Assembly: GCA_977020255.1 (NCBI GenBank)
Contig: CDROCS010003045.1
Span: forward strand, 1-60,180
DNA length: 60,180 nt
Source: Obrimoposthia wandeli
Lineage: Eukaryota
Direction: 5' to 3'
The translations under genes and the position numbers were made by a program. This document shows, piece by piece, positions 5,801-60,180 of this stretch. Within the stretch, counting starts at the first letter, position 1, and the number at the start of each line of letters is the position of its first letter. The notes under the pieces were generated by a model that made no database searches, had not been told where the DNA came from, and saw only the letters and a list, made by a program, of their open reading frames with translations.

Positions 5801-6397
5801 TTTTTCTGTGATTATGTTAGTTTCTAGTTGTAACATTGTTTCTGTTCTTGGTTGGAGAATGATATCTCCTTTTATTTCTAACTCGTATTCATTTTTGGCG
5901 TTAGGTCTGTAAATGTCTTTTATTTGATTTTTTTCAAAATCAAAGTGGAAATTATTTCCTAATTTTCTTAATGTATCTATTCCTATGATCATTTGGCAAG
6001 GACAATTTTTCATGATTTTTGTAGGTATTTTTATGAATTTATTTCCTATTTTAAAAAGACAGTCTAATTTTCCTATTATATTTACGGGTTGACCGTTTGC
6101 TGCTGTGACTTGACTATTTTCCTTAAGAAGAAGTAATTTTTGTTGTGTTTTTAAGAAAGATTCGTCTAAAACTGTTACGCTTGATCCTGTGTCAATTAAA
6201 GCTTTAAGTTTATATTCGTTAATTTCTACTTTTACATATGGTCGTTTGTCGTTATCTTTTTGATTTATTGTATATATTGTTGGTGCAGTTGGTTTTTGTA
6301 TATTTGTTTTATATATATATTTTTCTAAATCAGGATATTGTGAAGATTCCGCTTTTTCTGTTTCTTTGGTACTTGTAATTTTTTGTATATTTGTTTC
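2820..6397 (-). pseudogene. pol: Ty3/gypsy Pol: aspartic protease, reverse transcriptase, RNase H, integrase (frameshifted)
   Basis: PR KALIDTGSS (DTG 6193-6185); RT FCVDYRKLN, LDLQSGYWQI, LPFGL, VYIDDILI; RNase H TDASGYALGAVL, TDQRPL, NANADCLSR; IN GHLS/CKTCEIC, AMDVMGPL, LLTDKG, YHPQTDGLVERFNRTL. Confidence 0.96.
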
Positions 6398-8333
6398 TCA
6401 CATTTCATTTGATAATGTGTTTACTATGTTTTGATGATGATTAAAAATAAGGAATTTTGCCAAAAATGGGAAACATCCTAAGATTAATTTCCATGTTAAT
6501 CCTCCAACTTTATAAATATAATATGTTGATAAAATTTGACTTAGAAGAATCTTAAAGCAAATTAATAGAGCATATATTCCAACTAATCCAGAAAATGCTT
6601 GTCCAAAAATTAAAAAATTTTCCCATATTTTTGACATGGTGTTTTTAGTGGCTTTTATAAAATGATTTGGAGAAAGTAATAAGTCGTAATCAGGACGGCT
6701 AATTCCGTCAGGTACTGATCTTTCTATGATTTGTGTTAAAATTTTGGATCTTATTTGTGGAAATAAAATTTATTTTCTTAACTTATCTATATCTTTCTGT
6801 ATATAAATTCCTTTTGTGTTTAATTCGTTATCTGTTTGTATATTGATGTCGTTGCTGAGAGTGGTTAATTGTAATTTTTGTGGTTCTGCGACAATATCTC
6901 TTCTTGGAAGTGAAATCCAAATATCTTTTGAAATTTGATAATGAGGTGCCATTATGTTTGAGCAGTTTATTTCTTTTATGCTAAATGTGTTAAAGAGTAT
7001 GATTCTAGTGATTGGTTCTACAAATAATGAATTGTTTTTGTAAAAAATTGGTAATTCTTTTGTACATTTTTGGTGATTTCTTATGTTAACTATTACTTTT
7101 TTACATTGATAAGTGTATAACACTACTCCCATTACTCTTCCAAAAGTACCGTCAGCTAATGGTAATAATGGTGTTATTAATTCTGGGCTAGTAGCAATAA
7201 TTGCCAATTTCGTTTTTAATATTTCTTGATTTAATTTACAAGCATTCATTATGGTTTCTCTATATATTGCTTCTATTGTCATTAGTCCTTTGTGATAAAA
7301 ATAATCTAATTTATTGTTAAAATAATCATAATTTTTAATATCGAATTTAGTTGGTGTCGTTTTTGCATTATGTATTTTTTCATTACTTAAATATATTCCT
7401 TTATAATTAGTTGTATAAACAGAGTGTCCACATCGGGATTCCTCTTTCTTTTAATAAATCGCATTCCCTGAACCTTGTTCAATAGACATTAATATAGTTG
7501 GAGTTGATGTTTTTCGTATTTTTCGAGTTCTATATTTTTTGCGTATGTCCTTTGGAATTTGTTGATCTAGTTCCGGATCATCTCTAAATCTTTTTCCTTG
7601 AATTATTTGAAAAGTTTCTGATTTTAAATGTATTAATTTACATTGATCCATTTTTACTTTTTAGTAAAGTATTGAAGAACCCGTGTTACAGTGACCTATG
7701 TTTGCTTCACAAAATGGCATTGTTACCATTGTGTTTGTGGAAGGATCGAATGTTGCTTTAAAAGTTCTTAGTTCGACTTCAAAATTTTTAATAACTACTA
7801 AACCACTTTGCTTAACTCTCATTACGACATAAGTTCCTGTTGTACATTCTCCATCCGATTTAATCTACAATTTTTTTTTACCTACAACTGATATCATTTG
7901 TTGAATTATATTATTTTTCGCCGCTCGGACTTTAATTTCTCTATCTATTCTCAATTCTCCTGTTGCGAAAGCATCTTTACAATTTAAAGCGTCAACTATT
8001 ATTGGTGTTTTTCCTAATGCTGGTTTTCCTATTGAATTGTGACTATGTTGTCCACAATATGTTATAAATGTCTCTACATGTACTCTACAAATCTAAAACT
8101 TCTGCATATATGAAATCTGTTTCCTGATATACTTGATACAACTTAGTATTTTTGATTTTTACCTCGTTTGGGTCAGCGTCTGCACATTGCTGTAAATCCA
8201 TTAAAGAATATTTATTTTGAATTTTATATTTTGAACAATCATATGCTTCTAAAGCATTAATTGGTTTTATCATGTTCATAATTAGACATATTGTTAATAT
8301 TATCTGAATAATTTTCCATAATTTTTTCATCAT
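6398..8333 (-). pseudogene. env: Chuvirus-like (class III, gB-type) envelope glycoprotein, between gag and pol
   Basis: Signal MMKKLWKIIQIILTICLIM; AYDC..SL.D...C; CRVHVETFITYCGQHSH; DGEC; CGHSVYTT; FNNKLDY; CKKVIVNIRNHQKCTKELPI; FVEPITRI; LRK*ILFP; C-terminal hydrophobic WENFLIFGQAFSGLVGIYALL. The Cys pattern matches chuvirus G as I recall it. Two frameshifts and three internal stops. Confidence 0.85.
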
Positions 8334-8370
8334 TTTATTAAGATTATTTGTATTTTTAAAATTTTAGTTT

Positions 8371-10150
8371 TTAGATTTTTTGTGTTTTACGTTTTTTCTT
8401 GTGTTTTACTTTCTTTTCTTGTGTTTGAGTAGTTTGGTTTGTTTTTGTGATTGTATATTTATTTTTTTGTAATGTCAAACAACCATCTCTAAACATGTCT
8501 CCAAATTCGGATTGTAAGTTTGTTCTATTTGTTTGTGGTTCACTGTTATGGCATTGTTGGTGTATTTCTCTGTAACGATTATCCATTTCTTTAAGTCGTA
8601 ATTTTAACAATGCTAATTCATCTGTGTTTGGAGTTGTTTCTGCATTTTCTATAGTGTGGATAGGGTTTCTTGGGGTATATTGTCGATCTTGAGTACTGTT
8701 TTTGAACTTGTGGTTGCTGTGTTATTGTTGTGTTTCCAAATTGATTCATCATTGTGTTTAATTTTCCACAGTCATCAGTGTTGTGATTTTTCATATTACA
8801 AATCTTACAAAATTTTGTATCGATATTAAAATATCTATTTTGATTATTGTCATAATTGTTTGGTTTATTGAAGTTATTATTCATGGTAGTGTATTATTAC
8901 TTTGTCTATTTATTAATTTTCTACAAGTTTCAATTGTGTGATTGTCTTTTTGCAAAATCTGCAAAATTTTATGTTATAATTTTCGACAATTTTCTATTGT
9001 GTGATTTTGGAGTCCACAATTTGTGCATTTTTGAAAAGATCTTTGTGTAAATTGTGAGTTTGCAAAATTTATATTTGTTTGGTTTCTATAAAAATTATTT
9101 ATTGGTGGTCTAAATTGTTGAGGATTTTGAAAATTATATTGAGTATCTTGGTTAAAATTCCTAGTTTGGTTGTAGTTTGGTGGCGTTTGTGGTCGTTCTA
9201 TTTTTTCAAAAGATAATGCTGAAACCTCGGTTTGCTGTATCATATTTAGTCTTGCTTCTACTAGCTGAGCTTTTCCTATAGCCTGTTGAAAGTTTTCTAC
9301 TTCTAGTAATGCAGGGTGATCTCTAATTTTATTATTTAATCCATGTAAAAATTGATGTAAAAGTAATCGTTCTCTTTGTGCTTCTTCTATTTCGGGAAAA
9401 GATTTTAATGCAAGTCGTCGTAATTCGACTGCGAATATATTTGTGGGTTCTCCTACATGTTGCTCTCGTTGTCTAAATTGATTTAAGTAGTTCTGGTCGG
9501 ACTGTACTCCTAAAACCATATTTTAGAAATGTTGGACTAAGTGTTCCCATGTGTCTTTTTGCAGATTTGTTAGGGCAGTGCCTTTTAGGTATGCTGGAAA
9601 AACTCTAAGTTTTTCTAGGTCTGTCCATTCGAATGCTTGAGCAAAAGAATCATATCTATTCAAGAATTCTGGTAAAGATGATTTATCGCCATTAAATGCG
9701 TCTAGTGGTATGTTTAATCTATGATTTACCCTTTTGATGTACTTCGTTTATTTGTTCGTTATTTATTTCTATGTTAGGTGGTACTGGTTCTGCCACTGTT
9801 TCTGATGTTTCTGACGAGTTGTCTGAGTCAGATGTTTGTGGTAAGGATAAACTTTCTGTATCCGAATTTGATGTTAGGTTTTGGTTTTCAGAGTCGGTTG
9901 AAATTAAGCGATCCGTGTGTTGGTGAACTAACGGAGTTTCAGGGAAAAATTCGTTATTGGTTCTAAAATTTATCTGGGATTTAGGTCTCTGTGGTAGTGT
10001 TTCACTTGTGTTAGTTCTTACTAACCTAGTTTGAATGCGTCTCCAGTGAAGATTAGCATTACGTTTAGATTTTGAAATCTTTGTGTATTGTTCACTATTA
10101 TCCTGCGTACTGGGTCGAAAATTAATTTACGTGTTTATATATTCTTGTCT
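8371..10150 (-). pseudogene. gag: Gag with two CCHC zinc knuckles (frameshifted)
   Basis: AFNGDKSSLPEFLNRYDSFAQAFEWTD..AYLKGTAL; QREQHVGEPTNIFAVELRRLA; FLHGL; knuckles CTNCGLQNHTIENC and CKICNMKNHNTDDC; coiled-coil and basic C-terminal extension. Confidence 0.87.
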
Positions 10151-18732: not shown

Positions 18733-19041
18733 TTTTAGATCGACTTCTTATTAATGTCTCAGACAGTAAAGGCATTATTAATGTATAATTAATTATTGAA
18801 AAATCAATACTGTCTGAGACTGCTTGGCAGTCAATGATGACAAAAGGATTTAAAAAGTTTGAAGATTTATTGCCAAGGATTTAGAATTTAAATTTGAAGA
18901 AGTTATGGATTGATATCAGAAAATCAAATCAAAAGGTTTGTAAAGTTTTCTAGAAAAGTTGGTAAAGGTTTTATATTAATAAAAAGATTTTAGAAGTGAT
19001 GCGTTTATGATAATTATATTCCGATGTCCGTTTACGAAACA
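18733..19041 (+). repeat. 5' LTR of BEL/Pao element
   Basis: Near-identical to 25689-26012; ends GAAACA. Confidence 0.92.
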
Positions 19042-19042
19042 A

Positions 19043-19053
19043 TGGTAGCAGAG
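19043..19053 (+). promoter_or_regulatory. PBS complementary to initiator tRNA-Met
   Basis: TGGTAGCAGAG 1 nt after the LTR; complement of the animal tRNA-iMet 3' end CUCUGCUACCA. Confidence 0.88.
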
Positions 19054-19093
19054 TGTATAACGAGGATATCGATAAGAAAAAAAAGAAGCATGC

Positions 19094-20600
19094 TTGATTT
19101 ATGTTGTCGTGTTTCATCCAGAAACTTATGAGATGAGCACTAAGAATCTACGATTTCTGCAAAATGCTACAGGACACTATTATGGAAGGTTTGGAAAATA
19201 CTTTAATGACAAAATTGATAAGGTAAACTTCAATATCCTTAAAATGAAAATGATTAGAGCACCAACAGCAACAGTAATCAGACTGATAGTTGCAGATAGT
19301 TGTGATACCTTCAGTGATAATTTTTTATTTGATTTTGATGTTAAATTTTGTGATATTAAATTAAATAAAAAATCTTGTTCCTATAGTTCCTGTGCTTTAG
19401 AACAACCAGGCGATAAGCGGGGGTTCTGGAGCATAAGGACACAAAATAAAATGATAAAGAGGATAAACATCCTCCTCCCTCTAATATTTTGATTGTTGGG
19501 GATAGAGTCCGACTTATGGAACACACGAAGTGTATTAAAGCTAGAAATGAACGGGAAAAGGTAAAATATATAGGGGTGAACGTGATAGATGATGTGAAGA
19601 GCGGGGGACTAAGATAGGAACAGTTTTGGCTTCAGAAGCATGGGGAGAGGTTAGAGGAGAATGACTTGGTAGAAGAAGGGGATCAGATCAGAGTAATGTT
19701 TAAATTACTAGGGGGAATGAAGAAAGAAGAAGTAGAGGAAACAGGAACAACATTTTCAGAATTAATACTAAGATTAGTAAGTCAACAAGAAAAGGGTGAA
19801 GTGTTGAAAGCACTAAATAAAGTGCACTATAAGAATAGAGAAGCAAGGGAGATATTCAGGGCGTTACCACGAATTATTATAAAAAGAAAGCTAAACATCT
19901 AAGAAATAAATTAATAAAGAAAGCGAATGCGGCACGAAGGCTAGGACAGGAAAATTGGAGGAACAAGAAGATTTCAATGTGCAGATTAATGGAGCTATAA
20001 AGGATGTCTGGATAATGGGAAGCGAGAACACCATCAGACATGTAAAACAGAAGATAGATGCAGTCATAAAAGGAGAGAGTTTTACAATAAAAATAAATAC
20101 AGTTTTTTATTCGGATGGGATCTTAGATCAATGTCTGATCTCAGAAGGTTTGAAAGTGAAAGTGATTAAAACATTGGTAATAAGTACAGAAAAGGATGAT
20201 GCAGAGTCTATCGCAGCGACAGAAATATTTGATAAGGAGTTAGACTGGGAAAGTTGCGATGAAGATGGCAAAATAAATACTTCGTGGTATGTTTTGTTTT
20301 TAACGGGTCAGAGATAATAGTTGAATTAAGTATAAACCATTCGGGTGGTAAAGCCAGTAGGGAGGTAGAAAAACGGTTAAAATTAAAGGAGGGGAAATTT
20401 TGGCTACATAGAGAAGGAAAAAGGTACATAAGGAAAATATAAGAATTTATAAATGACAAGATATACGTCATACGCCTAAAAGGAGGGTCTGAAATTGAGG
20501 AAAAGGAAATAACCAGGTGTGACTTCAATATTGCGATAAACAATTTCTTGCCTGGAAGATGATAAGAAAAAGAAAAAAGAAAAGCAGAATATCTATGAAG
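19094..20600 (+). pseudogene. Pre-Gag region with three ubiquitin-like domains (19532-19716, 19970-20179, 20281-20487)
   Basis: QFWLQKHGERLEENDLVEEGDQIRVMFKLLGG; FNVQING..ENTIRHVKQKI..LDQCLISEGLKVKVI; FVVCFVFNGSEIIVELSINH..FWLHREGK..KIYVIRLKGG. Confidence 0.7.
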
Positions 20601-20602
20601 AA

Positions 20603-21720
20603 ATGTATAGGTCATTAAGTGAAATCTATGAGAAAAAGATAGAGACGGCGTTTCAAGAGTATGACAGCAGAAAAGAAGAAAGATGGGTTAGCGAGCAGAA
20701 GAAGATGGAAAACAAATTCGATGAAATACAAGGGAAAGTATGGGAAAGGACAGAGGACACGAAGCGAAAGCTCAATGGTAAGATAGGGCCAAGGAAACAA
20801 AGGTATAAGTCAGTTGAAGAAAATTCAGCTCCCAATTTTTAGAGGAGAAGTACAAAAGTACGAAAACTGGCGAGCTATATTTAACAGAGTGATCGACCAG
20901 TCAACGGTGGATAAAGAAGAGAAAATGCTGCATCTACTGCAATATGTGGACAGAGAACCATTAAGGTTAATTGATAGCTTGGGATACTCAGCAGAAAGCT
21001 ATGATGAACCGCTGAAGATATTGTCATTAAGATACGGAGGGACGGACAGGAATTATATACAGTTGATGGAAAAGGTGGAAAGGTTCAGGTAAATAAGGTG
21101 GAACAACTATCGGGATTTGGATATGTATAGCCAACTATTACAAAAGTAACCGTACGAGCACGAGCACTAGGAAAATAGGAGGAATTAGGGGAGGTTTTCT
21201 ATGTGAAAAATTGCTACAGAAACTACCAATGTTAGGAACAGCAGCATGGTCAAAATGGTTAGAAGCAGGAGATATACAAAAGAGTATAATAAATTTAGAA
21301 GAATGGATACAACAAAAGGCCGAAAGTTGGCGAATAGCCGAGGAAATAGCGAGTTGCAGCAGAGAAGCACCAAAATATAAAAATAATGAAAGAGCAAAAA
21401 CCTTCGTAGAAGCGGTAAAGCAAAATGATAGAATGATCTCTGGACAATTTCAAAGGAAGGGGAGAAAGATGATAAAGTGTCTAAGGTATAAGAAGGAGCA
21501 TTACACAGACCAATGTAAAGAATTGCAGAGATTATCCCTAGCAGAGAGACGCTGGTGGGTTGAAAAGGAAAGTTTATGTAGAAATTGTCTGCGAAATAAT
21601 CATTACGTAAAACAATGCAAGGTGGATAAGTTGTGTAAAATGAGGAATCGCACCGAAAAACACGATTGGATATTGCATGTGGATGAAGAGCGTAGTAATC
21701 AGACGTGCCCACAATCCTAC
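20603..21720 (+). pseudogene. gag: BEL/Pao Gag (coiled coil, DUF1759-type region, three Cys-His motifs)
   Basis: LPIFRGEVQKYENW..FNRVID..EKMLHLLQY..LSLRYG; CLRYKKEHYTDQC, CRNCLRNNHYVKQC, CKMRNRTEKHDWILH. Confidence 0.9.
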
Positions 21721-24700
21721 TTAACAAGAGGGACAAGAGAAGAAACTACATTCTTGGCATTAAGAATCGTACCGGTTATGGTACGGCATAGAGGCCAAGA
21801 ATTGGTCAACGCCTTGTTAGATGATGCCAGCACACGCTCATATATTAGTAAGGATTTGTCACGAACGCTAAGAGTGTCAGGACAAAAACAAAATATTCGG
21901 GTGGAGATTATTGGAGGAAACGAGGAAACGATGGACTGTGCTGAAGTAAACATAGAATTAGAGAGCACGGATTGAAAATATGTGAAGCTAATCAACGCAT
22001 TAACAGTACCAGAGATTACCGGGGACTTAGAGGTAATAAATTGGTCAGTAAAAGCAAAAACGTGGAGGCATTTGGAGGGTATAAAATTCCCAGCGGTAAA
22101 TGTAAAGAGAAAAGTTGAATTATTACTGGGTGCGGACAACCTCGAATTGCAGAGTGCCCTTAAAGAAGTGAGAGGAGGACCAGTTGCACTGATAGAAAAA
22201 TTGACATCGTTGGGATGGACTTGTATTGGTCAGGTTAGAGGAGCTAATATAGGTAGACAACACACGAATTTGGCTCACACCTATTTTGGAACCCAGATCG
22301 AAACGGAGGAATTTAATATAGGAAAATTCTGGGAAGTAGAAGCCGTACCAAATCTCCAAAGTAAGTAAAGTTATAACGACAAAAAGTTATTAAAAGAAAC
22401 ACGACTCGGAATTAAAGAAATTGAAGGAAGGTATGAAGTCAGCCTACTGTGTGGAAAAATCGTTTATGTTAGATGGGATGGTAAAATGGCGAACCAGCGA
22501 CAGAAGAGTTTGGAGAGAAGATTAGACAAGGACACGTGGTTAAGATCGGAGTACATGGCCGTCATCGAGAGCCATATCCAGAAAGGTTATATCAGGAAGG
22601 TACCCGAAGAAGAAGTAAAATGACAATGTGGTTGTGACCACATTTTCCGGTCGTCAAGCGATAAAAGGATACAATGAAGGTGCGAATAGTGTTTGATGCG
22701 GCGGCGAAGGTGCGAGGCACAAGTTTGAATGATTTAATTCATTGTTGGCCGAAGTTGCAAGGAGATTTAGTCACGATCTTATTAAGATTCAGAAAAAATG
22801 CTGTAGCATTAGTTTGTGATATATCAGAGATGTATCTACAGATAAAGATAAAACGTGGCTGAGATTTATATGGAAAGACCGCAAACAAGTAGACACATAC
22901 GAATTTAATCGGGTAGTTTTTGGGATCAATGCGTCACCATTCTTAGCACAATTAGGGACTCGAATAAACACTGAAAGGTTCGTGGGAGTATGAAATAGGG
23001 CTATCGAGACGATATTAAAGTCCACATACATGCATGACAGTTTGAATTCGGTACCGTCAGTCGAGGAGGCGATACAATTACAACAAGACCTACTGCAGGT
23101 ATGGGGCGGTGCGGGAATGAGTGCCAAAAAGTGGCTAAGTAGCAATCACCGAGTTAATCAACAAATCGCCACAGCAGATCAAGCGAAGGTCTTACAAATT
23201 GCGGATGGCGAAACGATGCAAAGTATAAAGACGTTAGGAGTGGCGTAGAACGCGCAGGTGGAAGGTTTTTGAGATGACGACGAATGTAGAGATGTTAACG
23301 ACCATTACAAAGAGGACATTTCTAAGTCTTCTGTCAAAAGTATTTGATCCATTAGGGTTTGCTGGTCCGATAGTAATACGGGCGAATTATTATGCAGGAG
23401 CTATGGCTTTCAGGAAGGAATAGGATGAGAAGTGGAATGGGGTATTAAAGAAGAGAAAAATCCATTGGGTAGAAGACGTAAAGTTACTGAATAAGGTTAA
23501 AGTTCCCCTTGAGATGGATACGGGCGGGAGTAGCTAGTAAATGTTCGATACATATATTTGTAGACGCTTCTGAGCAGGCATATGGAGCAGTAGATTACTT
23601 GAGAAATGAAGAAGCGGAAAAATAGTAGTAAGTTTCATAGCGTCAAAAACAAAAGTTGCGCCTTTAAAAGTAAAAAGTATACCGCGTTTAGAGTTATTAG
23701 CTGCAGATGTCGGTTTTAAATTGGCAAAGGTACTCACGAGTGCGCTAGACTTAAAGTTAAAAGAGGTAAAGTTTTGGCTCGACAGTCTGAACGTACTGTG
23801 GTGGATACGCCAGCCAGGGCGGTATTATAATGCATTTGTTGCTAATCGCGTAGAACTTATAATGGAGGACACAAGTATAGCTCAGTGGAGGCATGTACCC
23901 ACAAAGTTAAACCCAACGGATATATTGTCAAGAAGAGTCGAGGTTCATCGACTGAGCCAAGATAAATTATGGTGGGAAGGTCCCGAGTTCTTATTAGGCT
24001 CAGAGACAGCGTGGCCGAAGCAATCAACACAAGGAGAAATGTCAACAGAAGTTGAAAATAAAAGAAAAGTGATAGTGACACATGTTACGCAGAAGATCGA
24101 TGGGTTCGACATAAGCAAGTATTCGACATTAGTAAGATTACAAAGATGCATGGCGTGGATAATACGCTTCACAACCAACGCACAGTTAGATCGAGATAGA
24201 CGATTATTGAAGGAACTGGAGATCACAGAGATCCAAACAGCCACAAAGCGGTTGGTAAAAGATGAGCAAAGAAGATATTATCAGGAGTATTATAAAAGGT
24301 TAGAACAACAGAAGCCGATAGAGAATAACAGTGGACTAATTAAATTGAATCCATGGATAGATCTAGATGGAATAATCTTGGCAAATACAAGAATTATCCA
24401 TGCACAATTTTTGGATTATCAAGCTAAGTATCCGATTATATTACCCTACGAAAGTTGGATCACAAAATTGATAGTAGAAGCCCAAAACAGGAAGTTGCAT
24501 CATTATGCAGGCGTGCAGCATGTATTGAGTGAGATCAACAAGCAATATTGGATCCCAAAAGCAAGACGATTAGTAAGAAGCGTAGAAATCAAATGTGTGA
24601 CCTGCTAAAAGAGTAAGTCGGGTGGAATGTCAGCGGCAATGGCTCCATTACCGTATTTTCGTTTTGAAGAACTACTCAGGGCATTTGCGAACGTTGGAGT

Positions 24701-25547
24701 GGATTACGCAGGACCAATTTTAACGAAGCAAGGCCGTGGAAATGTCAGAAGGAAACGGTACTTGTGTCTACTAACATGCTTACAGACCCGCGCAGAGCAT
24801 TTGGAAGTTACGTATGATTTAACAACAGATGAAGTGATCAGAGCGTTAAAACGTTGAAGGCGAGGACGACCAAGAATGTTTTTATCGGATAACGGGTGGA
24901 ATTTTGTTGGAAGATACGGAATTTTATAAAAGATACGTACAGTATTAAGAAAGAACTAGAAAAAGATGAGATCCGATTTGTGTTTAACTTACCTCACCGC
25001 ACTTTGGAAGAGTTTTTGAAATTATGGTGAAGTGTTCAAAAAGGCCATATTTAAACTACTGAAGAACGCGGATATTAGTGACGAAGAGTTAACAACCATC
25101 TTCATTGAAGCCGAAGCGTTGATAAATTCACGGCCGATTGGGATAAAAAATACAGATCCGAAGGAGAGCGAAGCGTTGACACCAAATCATTTTTTGATAG
25201 GCGAGGCACACGTAGAAACTGATTTTGAAGGAGAACGGTGTGGTATACAACAGCGTTGGAGGTTCGTGCAAAAGTTGACGACAGAGCTATGGAAACGATG
25301 GATGGAGGAGATTGTGCCAATGTGGGCACCTCGACAACGGTGGAATCAGGAACGTACGCCGTTGAAGAATGGAGATATGGTTTGGGTTATTGATAAGCAA
25401 AGTGAGAGAGGGCAATGGAAGTTGGGGAGAGTCGTCGAAGTCAGTCCGGGAACGGATAAGAATGTGAGAGTAGCAACGGTGAAGATTGGGACACAGACGG
25501 AAGTAAAGTCGCTCGGACTCCTTTGTAAGCTAGAATGTGAGGCGTGA
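21721..25547 (+). pseudogene. pol: BEL/Pao Pol: protease, RT, RNase H, integrase (multiple stops/frameshifts)
   Basis: PR NALLDDASTRSYI; [39 protein letters not shown], catalytic motif mutated to YMHD; RH FVDASEQAYG, VAPLKVKSIPRLELLAA, WLDSLNVLWWI, WRHVPTKLNPTDILSR; IN HHYAG/CVTC, VGVDYAGP, FLSDNG, ALTPNHFLIG. Confidence 0.95.
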
Positions 25548-25688: not shown

Positions 25689-26012
25689 TGTTTAGGATCG
25701 ACTCTTATTAATGTCTCAGATAGTAAAGGCATTATTAATGCATAATTCATTATTTTTTAAATTAATTATTGAAAAATCAATACTGTCTGAGACTGCTTGG
25801 CAGTCAATGATGACAAAAGGATTTTAAAAGTTTGAAAATTTTTTGCCAAGGATTTAGAATTTAAATTTGAAGAAGTTATGGATTGATATCAGAAAATCAA
25901 ATCAAAAGGTTTGTAAAGTTTTCAGAAAAGTTGGTAAAGGTTTTATAGTAATAAAAAGATTTTAGAAGTGATGCGTTTACGATATTATATTCCGATATCC
26001 GTTTACGAAACA
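25689..26012 (+). repeat. 3' LTR of BEL/Pao element
   Basis: TGTTTAGG...GAAACA; matches the 5' LTR apart from scattered substitutions and an ~18-bp indel. Confidence 0.93.
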
Positions 26013-26528
26013 AGGACAAATCTGCCCATTTGTATCCACTGAAGGAAGATTAATTGGAATGCTAGAAAAGTTATATTTACTTATATCAATAAAATTGTTA
26101 TAAACCAAGCAAGCTACATAGATTAGGAAAATACGCGAAGGTACAGTTAGAAAGTTGTGGAGTCAATATAGAAAGTTGGATATGCGCAGAAAGAAGAAAG
26201 CAGAACCCTACACCTTCAGTGACCAGCTTTATAATCGAACAAGTGACCGAAAATTCGAAACACAAAACCCTCTATAAAGTGATTATTCGGGTGTATAGAA
26301 AATGTCAAACTGCATTTATTCTTACAATTTATATTTGTGGAAGGGGGAGATAATATCAATGAAGAACTGGAACAAGTTGGATTTCGTAATGTAAGTGCTG
26401 AAGAATATTAAAAGCACAGTGAAAATTGAGAATATTATGAAAACTTAAAGGCTGAAGAATTTTTTTTCAGTAATCGATTGAACGATTTTATGAAGATATC
26501 TAAATTGGTCATTTATCAATTTGTCATA

Positions 26529-55826: not shown

Positions 55827-56079
55827 TTGAAGTAAGCAAGAATAAGACAGCGAATTGAGAATAAATTATAGAAGAAGAATATATGAAATCAAATTGAGAT
55901 AAGATAATTGGGCAAAGTGTGAATCGAGTTGATACATTCCTCGAAGTAATTTGAACAAGGTTTGAATCGAGGATTGATATGTATTTCTCAAAGTAATTAA
56001 TTGAATAAGTGTTAAAAATCAGTAGATTTGTTCCTCGAAGTAAGTAATTTGAATAAATTTGTAAATCGAGTTGAATAAA

Positions 56080-57400
56080 TTTGTACGCAGGAGCTCAACT
56101 AGGTAATAATGCAGGAAATAATGTAGGTGATATGAATGCAGAACAGTTGGCACAAGTTTTTGAATGGAACGTTGAGACCCGCTTTTCGGGATCATTACAG
56201 ATTGGAAAGTTTAAAGGAGATGAGGAAAGTATTTGTGACTTCCGCAAAGAATATTTAAGTTGTGCAGACGTTCAAGGATGGAACGATAGAGAAAAATGTG
56301 TCACATACACGCACATTTGACCGGATTAGCACTTGAAATGTATAAACATTTGACAGATGCAGAACGTGCAGATTGGAAAACGTTGGGAAATTCTTTTTTT
56401 TTTTGAAAATTGGTATTGGGTGACTTAGAAAAAGTGAATAAAAAAGCAATTTTTTTTTGAGAGAACGGAAACAGAAACATAACGAGCATGAATGAATACG
56501 CGTATGTTTGAGACCTTGGCCTCACGAGCGCGCAGGAAAATATTGAGAAATCAGGCAGGTGAACTTGTAGCCCCAGATGTACAATTATCGAAAGATGAAC
56601 GGAACCAAAAATAAATAGCGAAGTTTTTGTCAGAATATATTCAGGGAGGACTGAAAAAATACATTAAAAAAGTGTTATTGGCAGTATCGGATACAAATGA
56701 TTTTGACAACGCCGTACGGAAGAGAATTGAGAAAAATATATAGAATAACGTAGCATTAGCTATTTACGCAATGGCCACAGGTGATAACGAGAAGACAAAG
56801 GTATTTATGAATAAGACAGAATCAGTATTATTCAGAATCAAAATTATGGACAAATAAGTTAGAAAAGGAGATGAATTCTGTAACGGAAATAAGAGATAAT
56901 TTCAAGTAGAAATAGAGATGATTCGAGGGGTGGAAACAATAATGATCCCTGAAATAGGAATCGAGACTGATTCAGGAGGGTAAATAGTAATGATTAATTG
57001 GAACAGGAACAGAGATGATTCCAGAAATAGACTTGAGTACAGATACTTCACAAATCGCTACAACTGAGAGGGAGACGATAGAAATTATAACGCTAACAGA
57101 GGAGAGCGAAATGACTCTCGGTTGGAAATAATGCAGGAAATAGTGATGAAAGATTCAATAATCAGAAGCGGTTATGAATCAAATTTTCGAAAGAAATGAT
57201 TTTTAGAGGACGCTATGACAATAGACAGAATAGTCGTCGAGTACAGTTCGAAGATGAGGAGCAAGAAATAAGATAGATATTATAGGAAGAATAATGTGTT
57301 ATACGTGTATACAGTAGGTCACTACTCGAGAGAGATTGTACAAAGTAAGAATTTGGAACTAATAGATTCGGAAAAAATAATTTTGGAAATAATTACAGGG
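56080..57400 (+). pseudogene. gag: Highly degenerate Ty3/gypsy gag
   Basis: IGKFKGDEESICDFRKEYLSCADVQGWNDREK; knuckle CYTC..VGHYSRDC near 57295-57340. Confidence 0.75.
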
Positions 57401-58330
57401 ATATAATTCACCCCGGCCATGGAGATAGGGTGGTGGGTATGCCTCCCGCCTGGAGAACGAATAATCAGTATGGATAGACAACAGTCGTCAGGTAGATACA
57501 ATAATTATGCAGACAGCCAGGTGCTGATAGATACAATAATTCAGGAGATATAATAATAATAATGTGGATAAGACAAACGAATCATTGAGTTCACCAAAAC
57601 CAGAAAGGAAATTTTGAATTACATAAATGATGACGAAGTGATAGGAATCACTGACACCAGAAATAGATTTTGAAGATAGTGATAGTAGAGATTTGAACTA
57701 ATATTTGGGAATAATCAAAGATTCACCACATACAAAGATGGCGATCTCATCTACGTTGTCGCGACAAAGGGAAAAAGCTCACACGAAAGAAGAGATGAAT
57801 GATTTAATGAACCGTATATTAGAAGCGTATGAGACACCAATAGAAAAAAACATGTAACGCACAACCCTACTGACAGTCATATAGAAACAACAAAAAAAAT
57901 GCTAAGAGTATGGAAAATGTGAAGATAATTAGTGAAGCTAAATAAATGTTGAATCAACCGCTAGACAAAGCAGGCGAAGCTCCAGAAGTTTTGGTAAAAC
58001 TACAAAATTAAAGTGCACAGATTAGAAGAAGTGCAAGCAGAGATTGATTAAACGCGGCTCGAGGTTGGTAAAGGATACGGTCGTTACGTAGAGATCAAAT
58101 CAAAGGTACGATGGTTTACTTCGATTAATTTCCGGACAGATTATACATGAAAAAACGTAATTTATTCCAAACAATGAAAACTGATCGAAAAAGTTGGCGG
58201 AGAAACTCCAAATAGATGGAATGAATATGTTGTTTAATTTATAAAGGAAGATCATAACGAAGATGTACCAGTCGAGGTGCGGATATCCGATAGAAAAAAT
58301 TAGAATAAATTGATGTCATCACCGTAGGAC

Positions 58331-59408
58331 GTCAGGAGTTAGTAGATAATGAAGGATTGGCAGTGATATTGAATTTCCGCACTAGATATGATAACGGCGC
58401 CTATAGAAATTTTAGATAGTCAGCCGAACAAAGTGACAGTGGAAACAATGATGTGACGAAGCCTGGAACCAGACGTTCACACCCGAGCCGAACGTAAGCC
58501 GGAAACCACAAGGTACGGAACCAAATAAAGAATCAACAAATGTTGTTGAGGTACCACCAGAGCTGGAAATAAGTCAACCCGGACAAAATGAAGTCACGGA
58601 TGCTTACGCTAAATTAGTGGGGGCTGAAAACGTAATAGAACTAGTTGGAGAAGCCGAAGTGTCCAAGATTGTAGATCTAGATTCACCAATTTGGAATGCC
58701 GCATACAGAGACAGACAAGGCGCAGCAAGATCAGACCCACCTCTGAATTAGAAATTCCAATATGGAAAATAATTGAGGCAGTTAGAGTTTATTAATATAT
58801 TTTGTGTCTCTATTTGTATTATTTTTTTATATAAAAATTGTAATAATTTAATAATTTAATTAATAATATGTCAGGAGTTAGTAGATAATGAAGGATTGGC
58901 AGTGATATTGAATTCCGCACTAAAGGAATATGATAACAATGCCTATAGAAATTTTAGATAGTCCAGCCGAACAAAGTGACAGTGGAAACAATGATGTGAC
59001 TGAAGCCTGGAACCAGACGTTCACACCCGGAAGCCGGAACGTAGCCAAACCTGGGTACGGAACCGATAAAAAAGAATTGAAATCTGGTAATTGAGGGTAC
59101 CGCAGAGCTGGAAATAAGTCAGCCCGGACAAAATGAAGTCACGGATGTAGCTAAATTAGTGGGGAGAAAACGAAAGTAATAGTAGAACTAGTTGGAGAAG
59201 CCGAAGTGTCCAAGATTGTAAGATCTAGATTCACCAATTTGGAATGCCGCATGCAGAGACAGACAAGGCGCGAAAAGATCAGACCCCTCTGAATTAGAAA
59301 CTCAATATGGAAAATAGTGGGGCAGTTAGAGTTTATTAATATATTTTTTGTGTCTCTATTTGTATTATTTTTTATATAAAAAATTGTAATAATTTAATAA
59401 TATTTAAT
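58331..59408. repeat. ~539-bp tandem duplication
   Basis: Units begin GTCAGGAGTTAGTAGATAATGAAGG at 58331 and 58870. Confidence 0.92.
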
Positions 59409-60168
59409 ATGAAAATGAGTAAAAAACTACTAAATCATTAAAGTCTAAAACTAAAAAGAAAATGATGAAGGGTGGGGATGTTCTGTTAATAGTAGAAATC
59501 TTTTTAAGTAGATGGTTTGGTGGAGTTAATACACAGAATGTACCTAAGAATTGAAAGAATATGAATTATATTGCACGTATACAAAAATGAAATGGTATAT
59601 ATGATATTTTTATAGAGGATTAAATAAAGATTTCAGTACAATTAAAAATAATTCCTGATGCATATCTTGGTACAAAATCTTTCGCTAAAAAGACTCTGTA
59701 ATTACATAAAGTTGCAAGTTTTACAACATAGATGTATTACGTAATCATCTTCATTACCTAGATAAGAATTGATCTTAATACAATTATTTTAACTTATAAG
59801 TAGTTAAAAAATCTTTCATTTAGAAATTATATAATACTTGATTAGTAATTACATAAAGTTGCAAGGATTTTTGGAACATAGTTACAATACCTGACAAATC
59901 TTTGTTACACACACGCACACACGTATAAAATTTTAAATATATTTTACACAAATTATATATAAAACTTATTTGTATGAGTAGATAGTTTAACTAAATTTAA
60001 GAAATTGTATAATACTAATTTTATGAGTAGATAGTTTAATTAAATTTTTAATAAATTAAATTTAATAGTAAGTAGCTAAAGTTTTAAAAAATTAATTTTT
60101 ATATGACGTTTAAAACATATTTTTTAAAAACTCTAACTAAAGGTTTTTTCTTTTCCCCCTTCCATACC
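59270..60168 (-). repeat. Inverted homolog of 33385-34255 (interior of the mini-Maverick)
   Basis: Reverse complement matches GGAAGGGGAAAAGAAAAAGCCTTTAGTTAGAG...CAATTCAGAGGG. Confidence 0.88.
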
Positions 60169-60180
60169 TCTCTCTATGGA

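What the first reader, a model, noticed from the sequence alone, without database searches (positions are those of the whole stretch)
19094..20600. BEL/Pao retrotransposon encoding a triple ubiquitin-like leader (two with C-terminal di-Gly) upstream of Gag
Seen: between the PBS and gag lie three beta-grasp-like segments. UBL1 is ..QFWLQKHGERLEENDLVEEGDQIRVMFKLLGG. UBL2 has ENTIRHVKQKI (ubiquitin: SDTIENVKAKI) and no GG. UBL3 is FVVCFVFNGSEIIVELSINH..FWLHREGK..IYVIRLKGG (ubiquitin ends LVLRLRGG). They are separated by a helical and an acidic linker and run into gag with only frameshifts or stops. Established: ubiquitin fusions are cleaved after GG by host hydrolases, and cytopathic pestiviruses use captured ubiquitin as a polyprotein processing signal. 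Inference: this family may use host DUB/ULP cleavage to release Gag with a defined N-terminus, or release free UBLs as conjugatable modifiers or decoys. LLGG and LKGG also fit the adenain (M/I/L)xGG consensus. I know of no such leader described in BEL/Pao elements.
Basis: partly seen in the sequence, partly recalled or inferred. Interest (0 to 1): 0.86.

Follow-up and report, generated by a model that had tools for sequence, protein, structure and literature searches.

The report
Gag leader with ubiquitin-like modules
A decayed BEL/Pao retrotransposon family translates everything from its primer-binding site into Gag, first stolen in-frame host gene pieces and then three small modules, two ending in Gly-Gly like ubiquitin; the coding leader is real, but the ubiquitin fold and any cleavage remain unproven.

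Summary

**Shown**
- 19094-20600 is not an untranslated leader. It is the N-terminal part of the ancestral gag ORF.
- Across 40 independent sister copies, one frame has 0.5-1.8 stops per 100 codons and no shared stop, from about 19300 into gag. The other two frames have 3.6-18.
- Natural stop-free pieces tile this frame.
- Modules U1 (19477-19716) and U3 (20276-20497) are paralogs, about 30% identical.
- Gly-Gly is the commonest end state: U1 in 28/40 copies, U3 in 21/34. U2 ends GG in 11 of 37 copies, though not in the window.

**Ubiquitin fold: not shown**
- Against: Pfam, AlphaFold2 (pLDDT 51-54), Foldseek and VIA-align give nothing.
- For: the joint U1/U3 profile's best two PDB hits are ISG15, in register (E 0.7). 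Language-model neighbours are all beta-grasp families.
- For: other BEL/Pao elements in this genome carry a Pfam-grade ubiquitin domain about 600 nt upstream of the gag domain, where U3 sits.

**New here**
- The ORF starts in U5/PBS.
- The stretch after the PBS is a mosaic of sense, in-frame host coding fragments. The window has PIH1. Sister copies have HSP60, importin-alpha, SPT5, UBA1 and an LRR protein.

First readers of this scan noted ubiquitin-Gag fusions and an SPT5-importin-HSP60 chimera elsewhere in this genome. Cleavage by host hydrolases is inferred, not tested.

The parts
18734..19042 (+). 5' LTR
   Evidence: Aligns with 25691-26013, 298/326 identical with gaps. Direct repeats were found.
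19024..19055 (+). Two in-frame ATGs (19024-19026 in U5 and 19042-19044 at the LTR/PBS junction) and the PBS-like TGGTAGCAGAGTG (19043-19055)
   Evidence: Sequence read. In 27 of the 28 sister copies with a recognisable PBS the frame reads (M/L/F)VAE(R/H/L) or a one-residue variant across it; the LRR copy L024 reads TVAEC. The frame runs on into coding sequence and is open for up to 332 codons. In the window this frame is open for only 29 codons.
19094..19290 (+). Captured host coding fragment, the C-terminal part of a PIH1 N-terminal domain
   Evidence: Pfam PF08190 scores E 9e-6 and 25.7 bits (cut-off 24) on window:19094-19492. The same piece in sister L005:1369-1869 scores E 7.4e-22. Only 5-7 copies share this stretch; others carry different host pieces.
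19294..19476 (+). First block shared by all subfamilies: Cys-rich pre-U1 segment, coding
   Evidence: Homology between subfamilies begins at about 19294-19314. The family frame has 0.68 stops per 100 codons, against 8.8 and 16.1 in the other frames. A frame-shifting deletion lies near 19448 in the window.
19477..19716 (+). U1, an 80-aa module ending LLGG (GG = 19711-19716); in-frame TAG at 19615-19617 in the window
   Evidence: tblastn gives 90% identity to L010:1617-1856. U1 is a paralog of U3. GG is present in 28/40 copies and the next residue is M in 33. The AlphaFold2 model shows strand-strand-helix, then low confidence.
19717..19969 (+). Charged helical linker (84 aa)
   Evidence: Mean column identity is 92% over 14 natural copies. 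AlphaFold2 predicts helices with pLDDT up to 90. The only PDB hit is an NtrC-type HTH at E 0.1. Frame shifts lie near 19880 and 19954 in the window.
19970..20185 (+). U2, a 72-aa module; ends LVIS in the window, LVGG in 11 copies and LVRG in 13
   Evidence: The AlphaFold2 strand-strand-helix has pLDDT 74-84 and the C-terminal half has about 33. Nearest language-model clusters are ThiS/SAMP2 at 0.85-0.88. There is no profile relation to U1/U3.
20186..20275 (+). Acidic spacer
   Evidence: Family frame has 1.8 stops per 100 codons, against 10 and 14 in the other frames. Aligned across copies.
20276..20497 (+). U3, a 71-aa module ending RLKGG (GG = 20492-20497), directly upstream of Gag
   Evidence: About 30% identical to U1 over its full length. 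GG is present in 21/34 copies and the next residue is S in 29. Natural ORFs run from U3 into gag: L020:1112-1879:-, L024:2537-3298:+ and L004:2669-3322:+. Frame shifts lie near 20297, 20416, 20443 and 20470 in the window.
20498..20837 (+). Gag N-terminal charged region
   Evidence: In frame with U3 and DUF1759 in natural copies. Family frame has 1.07 stops per 100 codons.
20838..21092 (+). BEL/Pao gag domain DUF1759
   Evidence: PF03564 scores E 6.8e-4 on the window piece and E 9e-5 on L024. Both are below the curated cut-off.
21211..25547 (+). Broken pol
   Evidence: Peptidase_A17 (Pao peptidase) scores E 1.3e-4 and 22.4 bits (cut-off 22.3) at 23274-23423. Asp_protease_2 scores E 0.003 and Integrase_H2C2 E 0.0024. 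DUF5641 scores E 8e-22 at 25251-25532.
25691..26013 (+). 3' LTR

Best explanation
**Shown.** This is an old, broken copy of an abundant BEL/Pao family whose gag-pol ORF began in U5/PBS. The ORF carried a long N-terminal extension in front of the canonical Gag. The extension has two parts.
1. A hypervariable cassette lies right after the PBS. It is built from sense, in-frame fragments of host mRNAs. The window has PIH1. Sister subfamilies have HSP60, importin-alpha, SPT5, UBA1 and an LRR protein, often several joined in one ORF.
2. A block shared by all subfamilies follows: Cys-rich segment, U1, helical linker, U2, acidic spacer, U3, then Gag. U1 and U3 are duplicates of one another, and their majority state ends in hydrophobic-x-Gly-Gly.

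**Inferred.**
- U1 and U3, and less surely U2, are strongly diverged ubiquitin-like domains. They descend from or parallel the recognisable ubiquitin domain that other BEL/Pao elements of this genome carry at the same position in front of Gag.
- As with natural ubiquitin fusions, host ubiquitin-type hydrolases would cut after Gly-Gly. That would free Gag with a defined N-terminus from whatever lies upstream.
- Such a cut would explain why the extreme N-terminus could take up foreign coding pieces, as long as they kept the frame.
- The pieces were probably acquired by template switching of reverse transcriptase onto co-packaged host mRNAs next to the PBS.
For: **One ancestral ORF.**
- The family frame has 0.5-1.8 stops per 100 codons and no shared stop in any of eight segments from pre-U1 to DUF1759. 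The other frames have 3.6-18 stops with 2-14 shared stops.
- Natural ORFs of up to 388 aa tile this frame.

**Start at the PBS and in-frame host pieces.**
- One search shows the frame across the PBS running into host-derived sequence.
- Pfam confirms the host pieces: Cpn60, Arm, KOW1_SPT5, LRR, E1_FCCH and PIH1.
- Arm+Cpn60 chimeras sit in single stop-free ORFs that run into the shared block.
- A 577-aa open HSP60 frame elsewhere in the genome is 90% identical to a retrotransposon-borne HSP60 piece.

**U1/U3 paralogy.**

**GG and the following residue.**

**UBL hints.**
- The joint U1/U3 profile has three PDB hits at E<=10. The best two are ISG15 domains, aligned in register: profile 29-56 of 70 against chain 31-58 of 76.
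- All named language-model neighbours of U1, U2 and U3 are beta-grasp clan families: ThiS, SAMP2, TmoB, YukD, ubiquitin/Rad60-SLD and Ub-Mut7C.
- Twelve loci have a PF00240 domain (72-92 bits) 584-637 nt upstream of PF03564 on the same strand. In two of them the two hits report open frames of equal length, 614 and 628 aa. U3 starts about 556 nt upstream of DUF1759 here.
Against: - No Pfam ubiquitin-clan hit appears for any natural copy at E<=10.
- AlphaFold2 mean pLDDT is 53.7 and 50.6. The C-terminal halves of U1 and U2 are unmodelled.
- Foldseek (pdb, afdb_swissprot) and VIA-align (best Z 3.8) find no beta-grasp.
- The ISG15 hit is not significant (E 0.7) and disappears with U1-only or U3-only profiles.
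- Language-model scores of 0.81-0.88 are below the tool's 0.9 line. About 70-aa proteins ending in GG may attract ThiS-like clusters for trivial reasons.
- U2 shows no relation to U1/U3, and its end varies among RG, GG, RC and GC.
- dN/dS could not show selection. The gag control itself scores 0.94.
- I could not fetch the ubiquitin-Gag loci to align them with U3. The positional argument therefore rests on coordinates only.
- No RNA data were available.
Confidence: 0.5

Rival explanations
1. The three modules are lineage-specific N-terminal domains of Gag, comparable to matrix or p12 regions, with a fold other than ubiquitin. The Gly-Gly ends are coincidental. If the extension is removed at all, the element's own aspartic protease does it.
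For: No ubiquitin signal comes from Pfam, AlphaFold2, Foldseek or VIA-align. There are no homologs among 1.84 billion representative proteins or 5.8 billion clusters. U2 is unrelated to U1/U3 by profile. Single-module profiles hit no UBL.
Against: Two paralogous modules both end in hydrophobic-x-GG at a domain boundary followed by a charged spacer. The ISG15 hits are in register. Beta-grasp neighbours appear for all three modules. A genuine ubiquitin domain sits at the equivalent position in other BEL/Pao elements of the same genome.
Confidence: 0.28
2. The modules are ubiquitin-like but are not cut off. They stay on Gag as interaction domains, for example for the proteasome, p97 or ESCRT machinery, or as a degradation-resistant decoy, as in UBL-UBA shuttle proteins.
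For: The same UBL hints apply. The body of U1/U3 is so diverged that ubiquitin-specific hydrolases may no longer recognise it. U2 has RG or RC ends in many copies.
Against: Gly-Gly is the majority end state of both U1 and U3, with a non-Pro residue after it. An uncut leader would leave variable host-protein fragments of 100-400 aa on every Gag, yet several such subfamilies amplified.
Confidence: 0.12
3. The whole extension, U1-U3 included, is passenger material. It is a series of host coding fragments picked up next to the PBS and merely tolerated because the frame was kept. U1-U3 would be the oldest and most decayed capture, of a host multi-UBL gene, and have no role of their own.
For: At least six different host genes were captured in the same region. 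Ubiquitin-like sequences are hugely amplified in this genome, with 5,275 first-look candidates.
Against: The U1-U3 block is present in all subfamilies while the cassette upstream turns over. The linker is the best conserved part of the leader, at 92% column identity.
Confidence: 0.1

Closest known systems
Cytopathic pestiviruses (BVDV) with host ubiquitin or UBL-coding inserts in the polyprotein (from established knowledge)
   Same: Host mRNA fragments are recombined in frame into a viral polyprotein. A ubiquitin-type module ending in Gly-Gly lies directly upstream of a viral protein, where host hydrolases create the new N-terminus.
   Different: That is an RNA virus with recent, recognisable ubiquitin. 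Here the element is an LTR retrotransposon and the modules are fixed in the whole family. They are too diverged for Pfam, sit at the N-terminus of Gag, and cleavage is untested.
Cellular ubiquitin fusion genes (polyubiquitin, UBA52, RPS27A) and ISG15 (two tandem UBLs ending LRLRGG)
   Same: They have tandem modules of about 75 aa, each ending in Gly-Gly and followed by a non-Pro residue. The U1/U3 motif FWL..(Q/E)G resembles the ISG15 segment that HMMER aligned.
   Different: There is no significant sequence similarity. The modules are separated by an 84-aa helical linker and an acidic spacer. The downstream partner is a retroelement Gag.
Ubiquitin-Gag BEL/Pao elements of this same genome (first-reader notes s1-247194, s1-217560, s1-224266)
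   Same: A UBL module lies about 550-640 nt upstream of the DUF1759 gag domain on the same strand and, where open, apparently in the same ORF.
   Different: Those have Pfam-grade ubiquitin (72-92 bits). This family's U3 scores nothing in Pfam, and the family has three modules plus a host-fragment cassette. I could not compare the sequences directly.
Gene capture by retroelements: retroviral Gag-onc transduction, maize Bs1, Drosophila TART capturing nxf2, piwi and aub (PMC13534243)
   Same: Host gene fragments are carried and amplified inside a retroelement. Repeated independent captures occur.
   Different: The TART captures are 140-235 bp and are thought to act through piRNAs. Here the fragments reach over 1 kb and come from at least six genes. 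All are in sense, kept in frame from the PBS into Gag, and often chained as chimeras.
BEL/Pao LTR retrotransposons in general
   Same: The element has LTRs, a PBS, gag with DUF1759, Peptidase_A17 and an integrase with DUF5641.
   Different: I know of none with a 450-900 aa coding extension between the PBS and Gag, and I found none in the paper library.

Membership tests
BEL/Pao LTR retrotransposon | Two LTRs flanking an internal region, with a PBS next to the 5' LTR | tested here: met
   LTRs at 18734-19042 and 25691-26013 and a PBS-like motif at 19043.
BEL/Pao LTR retrotransposon | Pao-type pol markers (Peptidase_A17, DUF5641 after the integrase) | tested here: met
   PF05380 scores 22.4 bits against a cut-off of 22.3 at 23274-23423. 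PF18701 scores E 8e-22.
BEL/Pao LTR retrotransposon | Gag with DUF1759 | tested here: inconclusive
   PF03564 scores E 9e-5 and 6.8e-4. At 22.9 and 20.1 bits it is below the 25.4 cut-off.
Ubiquitin-like (beta-grasp) domain | Sequence match to a ubiquitin-clan profile | tested here: not met
   No ubiquitin-clan family at E<=10 for 5 ORFs and 19 domain copies. The joint profile against PDB gives ISG15 only at E 0.7, and single-module profiles give none.
Ubiquitin-like (beta-grasp) domain | Beta-grasp fold (beta-beta-alpha-beta-beta around one helix) | tested here: inconclusive
   The AlphaFold2 models have pLDDT 51-54. The N-terminal strand-strand-helix is seen in all three modules and the rest is low confidence. 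There are no fold matches. Language-model neighbours are all beta-grasp but score below 0.9.
Ubiquitin-like (beta-grasp) domain | C-terminal Gly-Gly at the domain end | tested here: met
   U1 has GG in 28/40 copies and U3 in 21/34. U2 is mixed, with GG in 11 and RG in 13.
Ubiquitin fusion processed by host hydrolases | Cleavage after Gly-Gly that releases the downstream protein | not testable with these tools
   Only the precondition was checked: the residue after GG is M, I or S, not Pro.
Host gene transduction by a retroelement | Insert homologous to a host gene present elsewhere in the genome | tested here: met
   Pfam domains of cellular proteins were found in the cassette. A 577-aa open HSP60 frame at C3717:223497-224096 is 90% identical to the element-borne piece.
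Host gene transduction by a retroelement | Insert lies inside the element and is amplified with it | tested here: met
   An LTR and PBS lie upstream of the host pieces and the shared leader lies downstream. More than 100 element-type HSP60 pieces were found.

The most novel reading that the evidence does not exclude
A retrotransposon lineage uses ubiquitin-like modules as a host-cleaved insulator in front of Gag. This turns its N-terminus into an open slot that collects, expresses and amplifies in-frame fragments of host proteins: chaperonin, importin-alpha, SPT5, the E1 enzyme and PIH1. The released fragments might act as decoys or dominant-negative inhibitors of host factors. This would be a natural ubiquitin-fusion expression vector inside a genome.
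Probability: 0.2. Interest if true: 0.9.

Novelty: new variant of a known kind. Interest (0 to 1): 0.72.

Why it matters
If the modules are ubiquitin-like and are cut by host enzymes, this would be a retroelement that outsources Gag maturation to the host ubiquitin system. That strategy is known only from a few RNA viruses that captured ubiquitin.

Whatever the fold, the family shows something rarely documented for LTR retrotransposons in animals. Translation starts at the primer-binding site and runs through a turnover-prone cassette of in-frame host coding fragments. This gives a direct view of template-switch gene capture and of the selection that keeps a polyprotein frame open.

It also matters for annotation. 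Thousands of ubiquitin-, HSP60- and importin-like hits in this genome are retrotransposon cargo, not genes.

Tried and rejected
1. **AlphaFold2 on two natural ORFs.** I folded L010:1392-2261 and L026:1486-2217:- with alignments of sister copies. Mean pLDDT was 53.7 and 50.6, too low to decide the fold.
2. **Fold searches on the second model.** Foldseek pdb, afdb_swissprot and VIA-align wide gave no match of note.
3. **Sequence searches for the leader.**
   - phmmer of the U1-U2 ORF against 1.84 billion representatives gave one hit. It was a bacterial He_PIG repeat protein whose score comes from summed repeats, so it is spurious.
   - The U1/U3 profile and the U3-gag ORF against 5.8 billion clusters gave nothing.
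4. **U2 profile against PDB.** It hit only RecA concatemer constructs, again a repeat artefact.
5. **dN/dS between copies.** Values were 0.4-0.98 in frame, but the gag control scored 0.94. Most differences are decay after insertion, so I replaced this test with the stop-codon-by-frame test.
6. **Helical linker as a UBA-like or HTH domain.** Only an NtrC HTH appeared, at E 0.1, with no Pfam UBA hit. This is not supported.
7. **Weak leader-like hits as older lineages.** Hits at 38-48% identity are full of stops and lie next to 80%-identical HSP60 pieces. They are probably frame-scrambled copies, so I make no claim about them.
8. **Fetching more loci.** This included the ubiquitin-Gag loci.
9. 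**RNA evidence.** No RNA run was on record.
10. **Adenain (M/I/L)xGG reading.** Rejected: a four-residue motif with no adenovirus-type protease in the element.
Full report
**1. What is at the coordinates**

The window comes from an AT-rich animal genome (about 30% G+C, 1.35 Gb).

- Bases 18734-19042 and 25691-26013 are the two LTRs of one element. They are 298/326 identical with gaps.
- A PBS-like TGGTAGCAGAGTG follows the 5' LTR at 19043.
- The internal part carries BEL/Pao markers:
  - DUF1759 in gag;
  - Pao peptidase PF05380, just over its cut-off;
  - an integrase zinc finger;
  - DUF5641 at E 8e-22.
- The copy is broken. Between 19300 and 21100 it has one in-frame TAG (19615) and about ten frame-shifting indels. 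These lie near 19448, 19880, 19954, 20297, 20416, 20443, 20470, 20551, 20786 and 21084.
- A second locus, L002, is 99% identical including 1.1 kb of flank. It is a duplicated locus or haplotig, not an independent insertion.

**2. The leader is a family feature and was coding**

- The 1.5-kb stretch has hundreds of relatives in the genome. A DNA search gave 387 first-look candidates. A protein search gave 1,029 candidates, of which 143 were scored.
- I worked with 40 unique copies.
- Every copy is damaged. Their natural stop-free pieces nevertheless overlap in one frame all the way into gag:
  - L010:1392-2261 (290 aa): pre-U1, U1, linker and part of U2;
  - L030:1663-2475 (271 aa);
  - L041:1126-2289 (388 aa);
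  - L026:1486-2217:- (244 aa): U2, spacer and U3;
  - L020:1112-1879:-, L024:2537-3298 and L004:2669-3322: U3 into DUF1759.
  
  Their frames agree on 1,728 of 1,842 alignment columns.
- The stop-codon test is the clearest result. It covers eight segments: pre-U1, U1, linker, U2, acidic spacer, U3, Gag N-terminus and DUF1759.
  - The family frame has 0.5-1.8 stops per 100 codons, and no position where most copies share a stop.
  - The other two frames have 3.6-18 stops per 100 codons and 2-14 shared stops per segment.
  - The leader behaves exactly like the known gag domain.
- dN/dS had no power. The gag control scored 0.94, because most differences arose after insertion.

**3. The three modules**

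- U1 (19477-19716), U2 (19970-20185) and U3 (20276-20497) are present in nearly every copy.
- U1 and U3 align over their whole length at about 30% identity, with one 10-residue insert in U1. Cross-hits between them recur in almost all copies. They are duplicates.
- U2 shows no profile relation to them.

End states over the copies:

| Module | GG count | Other end states | Residue after the end |
|---|---|---|---|
| U1 | 28/40 | scattered single changes | M (33), I (5) |
| U2 | 11 of 37 | RG 13, RC 4, GC 3; window IS | I (31) |
| U3 | 21/34 | scattered | S (29) |

- Gly-Gly was therefore the family state for U1 and U3 and a subfamily state for U2. The following residue is not Pro.

**4. Are they ubiquitin-like?**

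Direct tests failed to show it.

- Pfam finds no ubiquitin-clan family at E<=10 in five ORFs or in 19 separate domain copies.
- phmmer and profile searches of very large protein sets find no relatives at all.
- The two AlphaFold2 models are poor (pLDDT 53.7 and 50.6).
  - Each module starts with strand-strand-helix, as a beta-grasp does. U2 reaches pLDDT 74-84 there, and U3 adds two late strands.
  - The rest is unmodelled.
- Foldseek and VIA-align return nothing relevant.

Three indirect lines point to a UBL.

1. **ISG15 hits.** The joint U1/U3 profile has only three PDB hits at E<=10. The best two are ISG15 domains. Profile positions 29-56 of 70 align with chain residues 31-58 of 76. That is the helix-to-strand-4 region, with the shared FWL..(Q/E)G pattern. 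At E 0.7 this is not significant, and it vanishes with single-module profiles.
2. **Language-model neighbours.** For all three modules, every named neighbour belongs to the beta-grasp clan: ThiS, SAMP2, TmoB, YukD, ubiquitin/Rad60-SLD and Ub-Mut7C. Scores of 0.81-0.88 lie below the tool's 0.9 line.
3. **Context in the same genome.** I followed notes by other first readers of this scan and searched the genome with PF00240 and PF03564.
   - Ubiquitin has 5,275 first-look candidates.
   - Among the 150 best of each search, twelve loci pair a ubiquitin domain (72-92 bits) with a DUF1759 domain. The DUF1759 domain lies 584-637 nt downstream on the same strand.
   - At C332 and C2349 the two hits report open frames of the same length, 614 and 628 aa, so both domains probably sit in one open frame.
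   - U3 starts about 556 nt upstream of DUF1759 in the window, which is the same place.
   - I could not fetch those loci to align them.

My estimates are about 0.6 that U1 and U3 are diverged UBLs, and about 0.4 for U2.

**5.

- Homology between subfamilies begins only at about 19294-19314. Upstream of that point the copies differ.
- In all 28 copies with a recognisable PBS, one frame stays open across the PBS and runs straight into coding sequence. It reads (M/L/F)VAE(R/H/L) or a one-residue variant in 27 copies, and TVAEC in L024. An in-frame ATG lies at the LTR/PBS junction or 6-8 codons upstream in U5. The frame stays open for up to 332 codons.
- That sequence is host-derived, in sense, and in the host protein's own frame:

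| Host piece | Copies | Evidence |
|---|---|---|
| PIH1 N-terminal domain | window and its close relatives | E 9e-6; E 7e-22 in L005 |
| Cpn60/HSP60 | L014, L011, L028, L055 |, 76 |
| Armadillo repeats (importin-alpha type) | L025, L041, L042, L044 |, 76 |
| SPT5 KOW1 | L013 | |
| Leucine-rich repeats | L024 | |
| E1 FCCH domain of the ubiquitin-activating enzyme | L016 | E 1.6e-8 |

- Single stop-free ORFs hold Arm plus Cpn60 and continue into the shared block: L046:775-1329, L029:956-1558 and L055:749-1348.
- At least seven different junction types between a host piece and the shared block are in frame. Chance alone would give one in three for each.
- A 577-aa open HSP60 frame elsewhere in the genome is 90% identical to an element-borne piece. 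More than 100 element-type HSP60 pieces exist.
- LTRs lie upstream of these cassettes.
- So 19094-19290 of the finding is a captured PIH1 fragment, and the "leader" is coding throughout.

**6. How it most likely works**

Shown: the gag-pol ORF began at U5/PBS. It ran through a turnover-prone cassette of host coding fragments and a conserved block (Cys-rich segment, U1, linker, U2, spacer, U3) before Gag.

Inferred:

- The fragments were picked up by template switching of reverse transcriptase onto co-packaged host mRNAs near the PBS. That mechanism gives sense orientation automatically. Only in-frame products survived, because gag-pol lies downstream.
- A Gag that carries 100-400 residues of random host protein at its N-terminus is unlikely to assemble, so a release step is expected.
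- The Gly-Gly ends of U1 and U3, the permissive next residue, and the ubiquitin domains at the same position in sister families make ubiquitin-fusion-type cutting by host hydrolases the best candidate. I put this at about 0.35-0.4.

Rivals:

- non-UBL Gag domains cut, if at all, by the element's own protease;
- UBLs that stay attached as interaction modules;
- a passenger-only reading.

**7. Comparison and novelty**

The nearest known parallels are listed here.

- Cytopathic pestiviruses with captured ubiquitin as a processing signal, and cellular ubiquitin fusion genes. Both comparisons rest on established knowledge.
- Gene capture by retroelements such as TART (PMC13534243). There the pieces are short and are thought to act through piRNAs.

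Searches of the paper library found no description of a UBL leader or an in-frame host-fragment cassette in BEL/Pao or other LTR retrotransposons. Absence from that library is not proof.

I class the finding as a new variant of a known kind. The scan's first readers had already noted ubiquitin-Gag fusions and an SPT5-importin-HSP60 chimera on other pieces of this genome. This report ties them to one architecture.

**8. Limits**

- The organism is coded, and no RNA data were available.
- All copies seen are broken, so the family looks extinct. Its LTRs are about 9% diverged.

Noticed in passing
G000:C2050:143565-144848; C2592:108492-110327; C1456:374610-376436; C4682:39914-41725; C1351:88680-89429: Tandem arrays of Pfam-grade ubiquitin units with a period of about 270 nt. 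Each unit sits in its own open frame of about 89 aa. These are distinct from the canonical 228-nt polyubiquitin genes at C2160, C2465, C83 and C1890. Overall there are 5,275 first-look ubiquitin candidates in the genome.
   Followed up: no
G000: e.g. C3834:37433-38032, C5895:141388-141987, C336:319734-320333, C493:67672-68271 (about 25 contigs): Full-length open GroEL-type frames of 545-585 aa, only 42-48% identical to the animal-type HSP60 piece. They look bacterial, so the assembly probably holds contigs of symbionts or contaminants.
   Followed up: no
G000:C3717:223497-224096: Candidate host HSP60 gene: one open frame of 577 aa with no stop. It is 90% identical to the retrotransposon-borne fragments and apparently has no intron in the matched part.
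   Followed up: partly
L002 = G000:C4659:165392-169900: A second locus 99% identical to the window copy, including 1.1 kb of upstream flank. It is a segmental duplication or an uncollapsed haplotype.
   Followed up: partly
L016:1120-1560, L017:1153-1560, L052, L022: One subfamily carries a fragment of the ubiquitin-activating enzyme E1 (FCCH domain, PF16190 E 1.6e-8) in frame just upstream of the putative ubiquitin-like modules. This could be coincidence or a functional link.
   Followed up: partly
window 19717-19969: The 84-aa linker between U1 and U2 is the best conserved part of the leader, at 92% column identity. It is predicted helical, and its only weak PDB hit is a Fis/NtrC-type helix-turn-helix at E 0.1.
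   Followed up: partly
L012:583-1416, L030 (706-1080 of the upstream piece), L045, L004: Another recurrent in-frame cassette piece of unknown origin. It has no credible Pfam hit and is followed by a long Asp/Glu run.
   Followed up: no
window 6013-10150 and 56000-60180: Another first-reader note (s1-208392) concerns a Ty3/gypsy element at 6013-10150. The last 4 kb of the window show the same strong purine skew as this element and may be another retroelement. Neither was examined.
   Followed up: no
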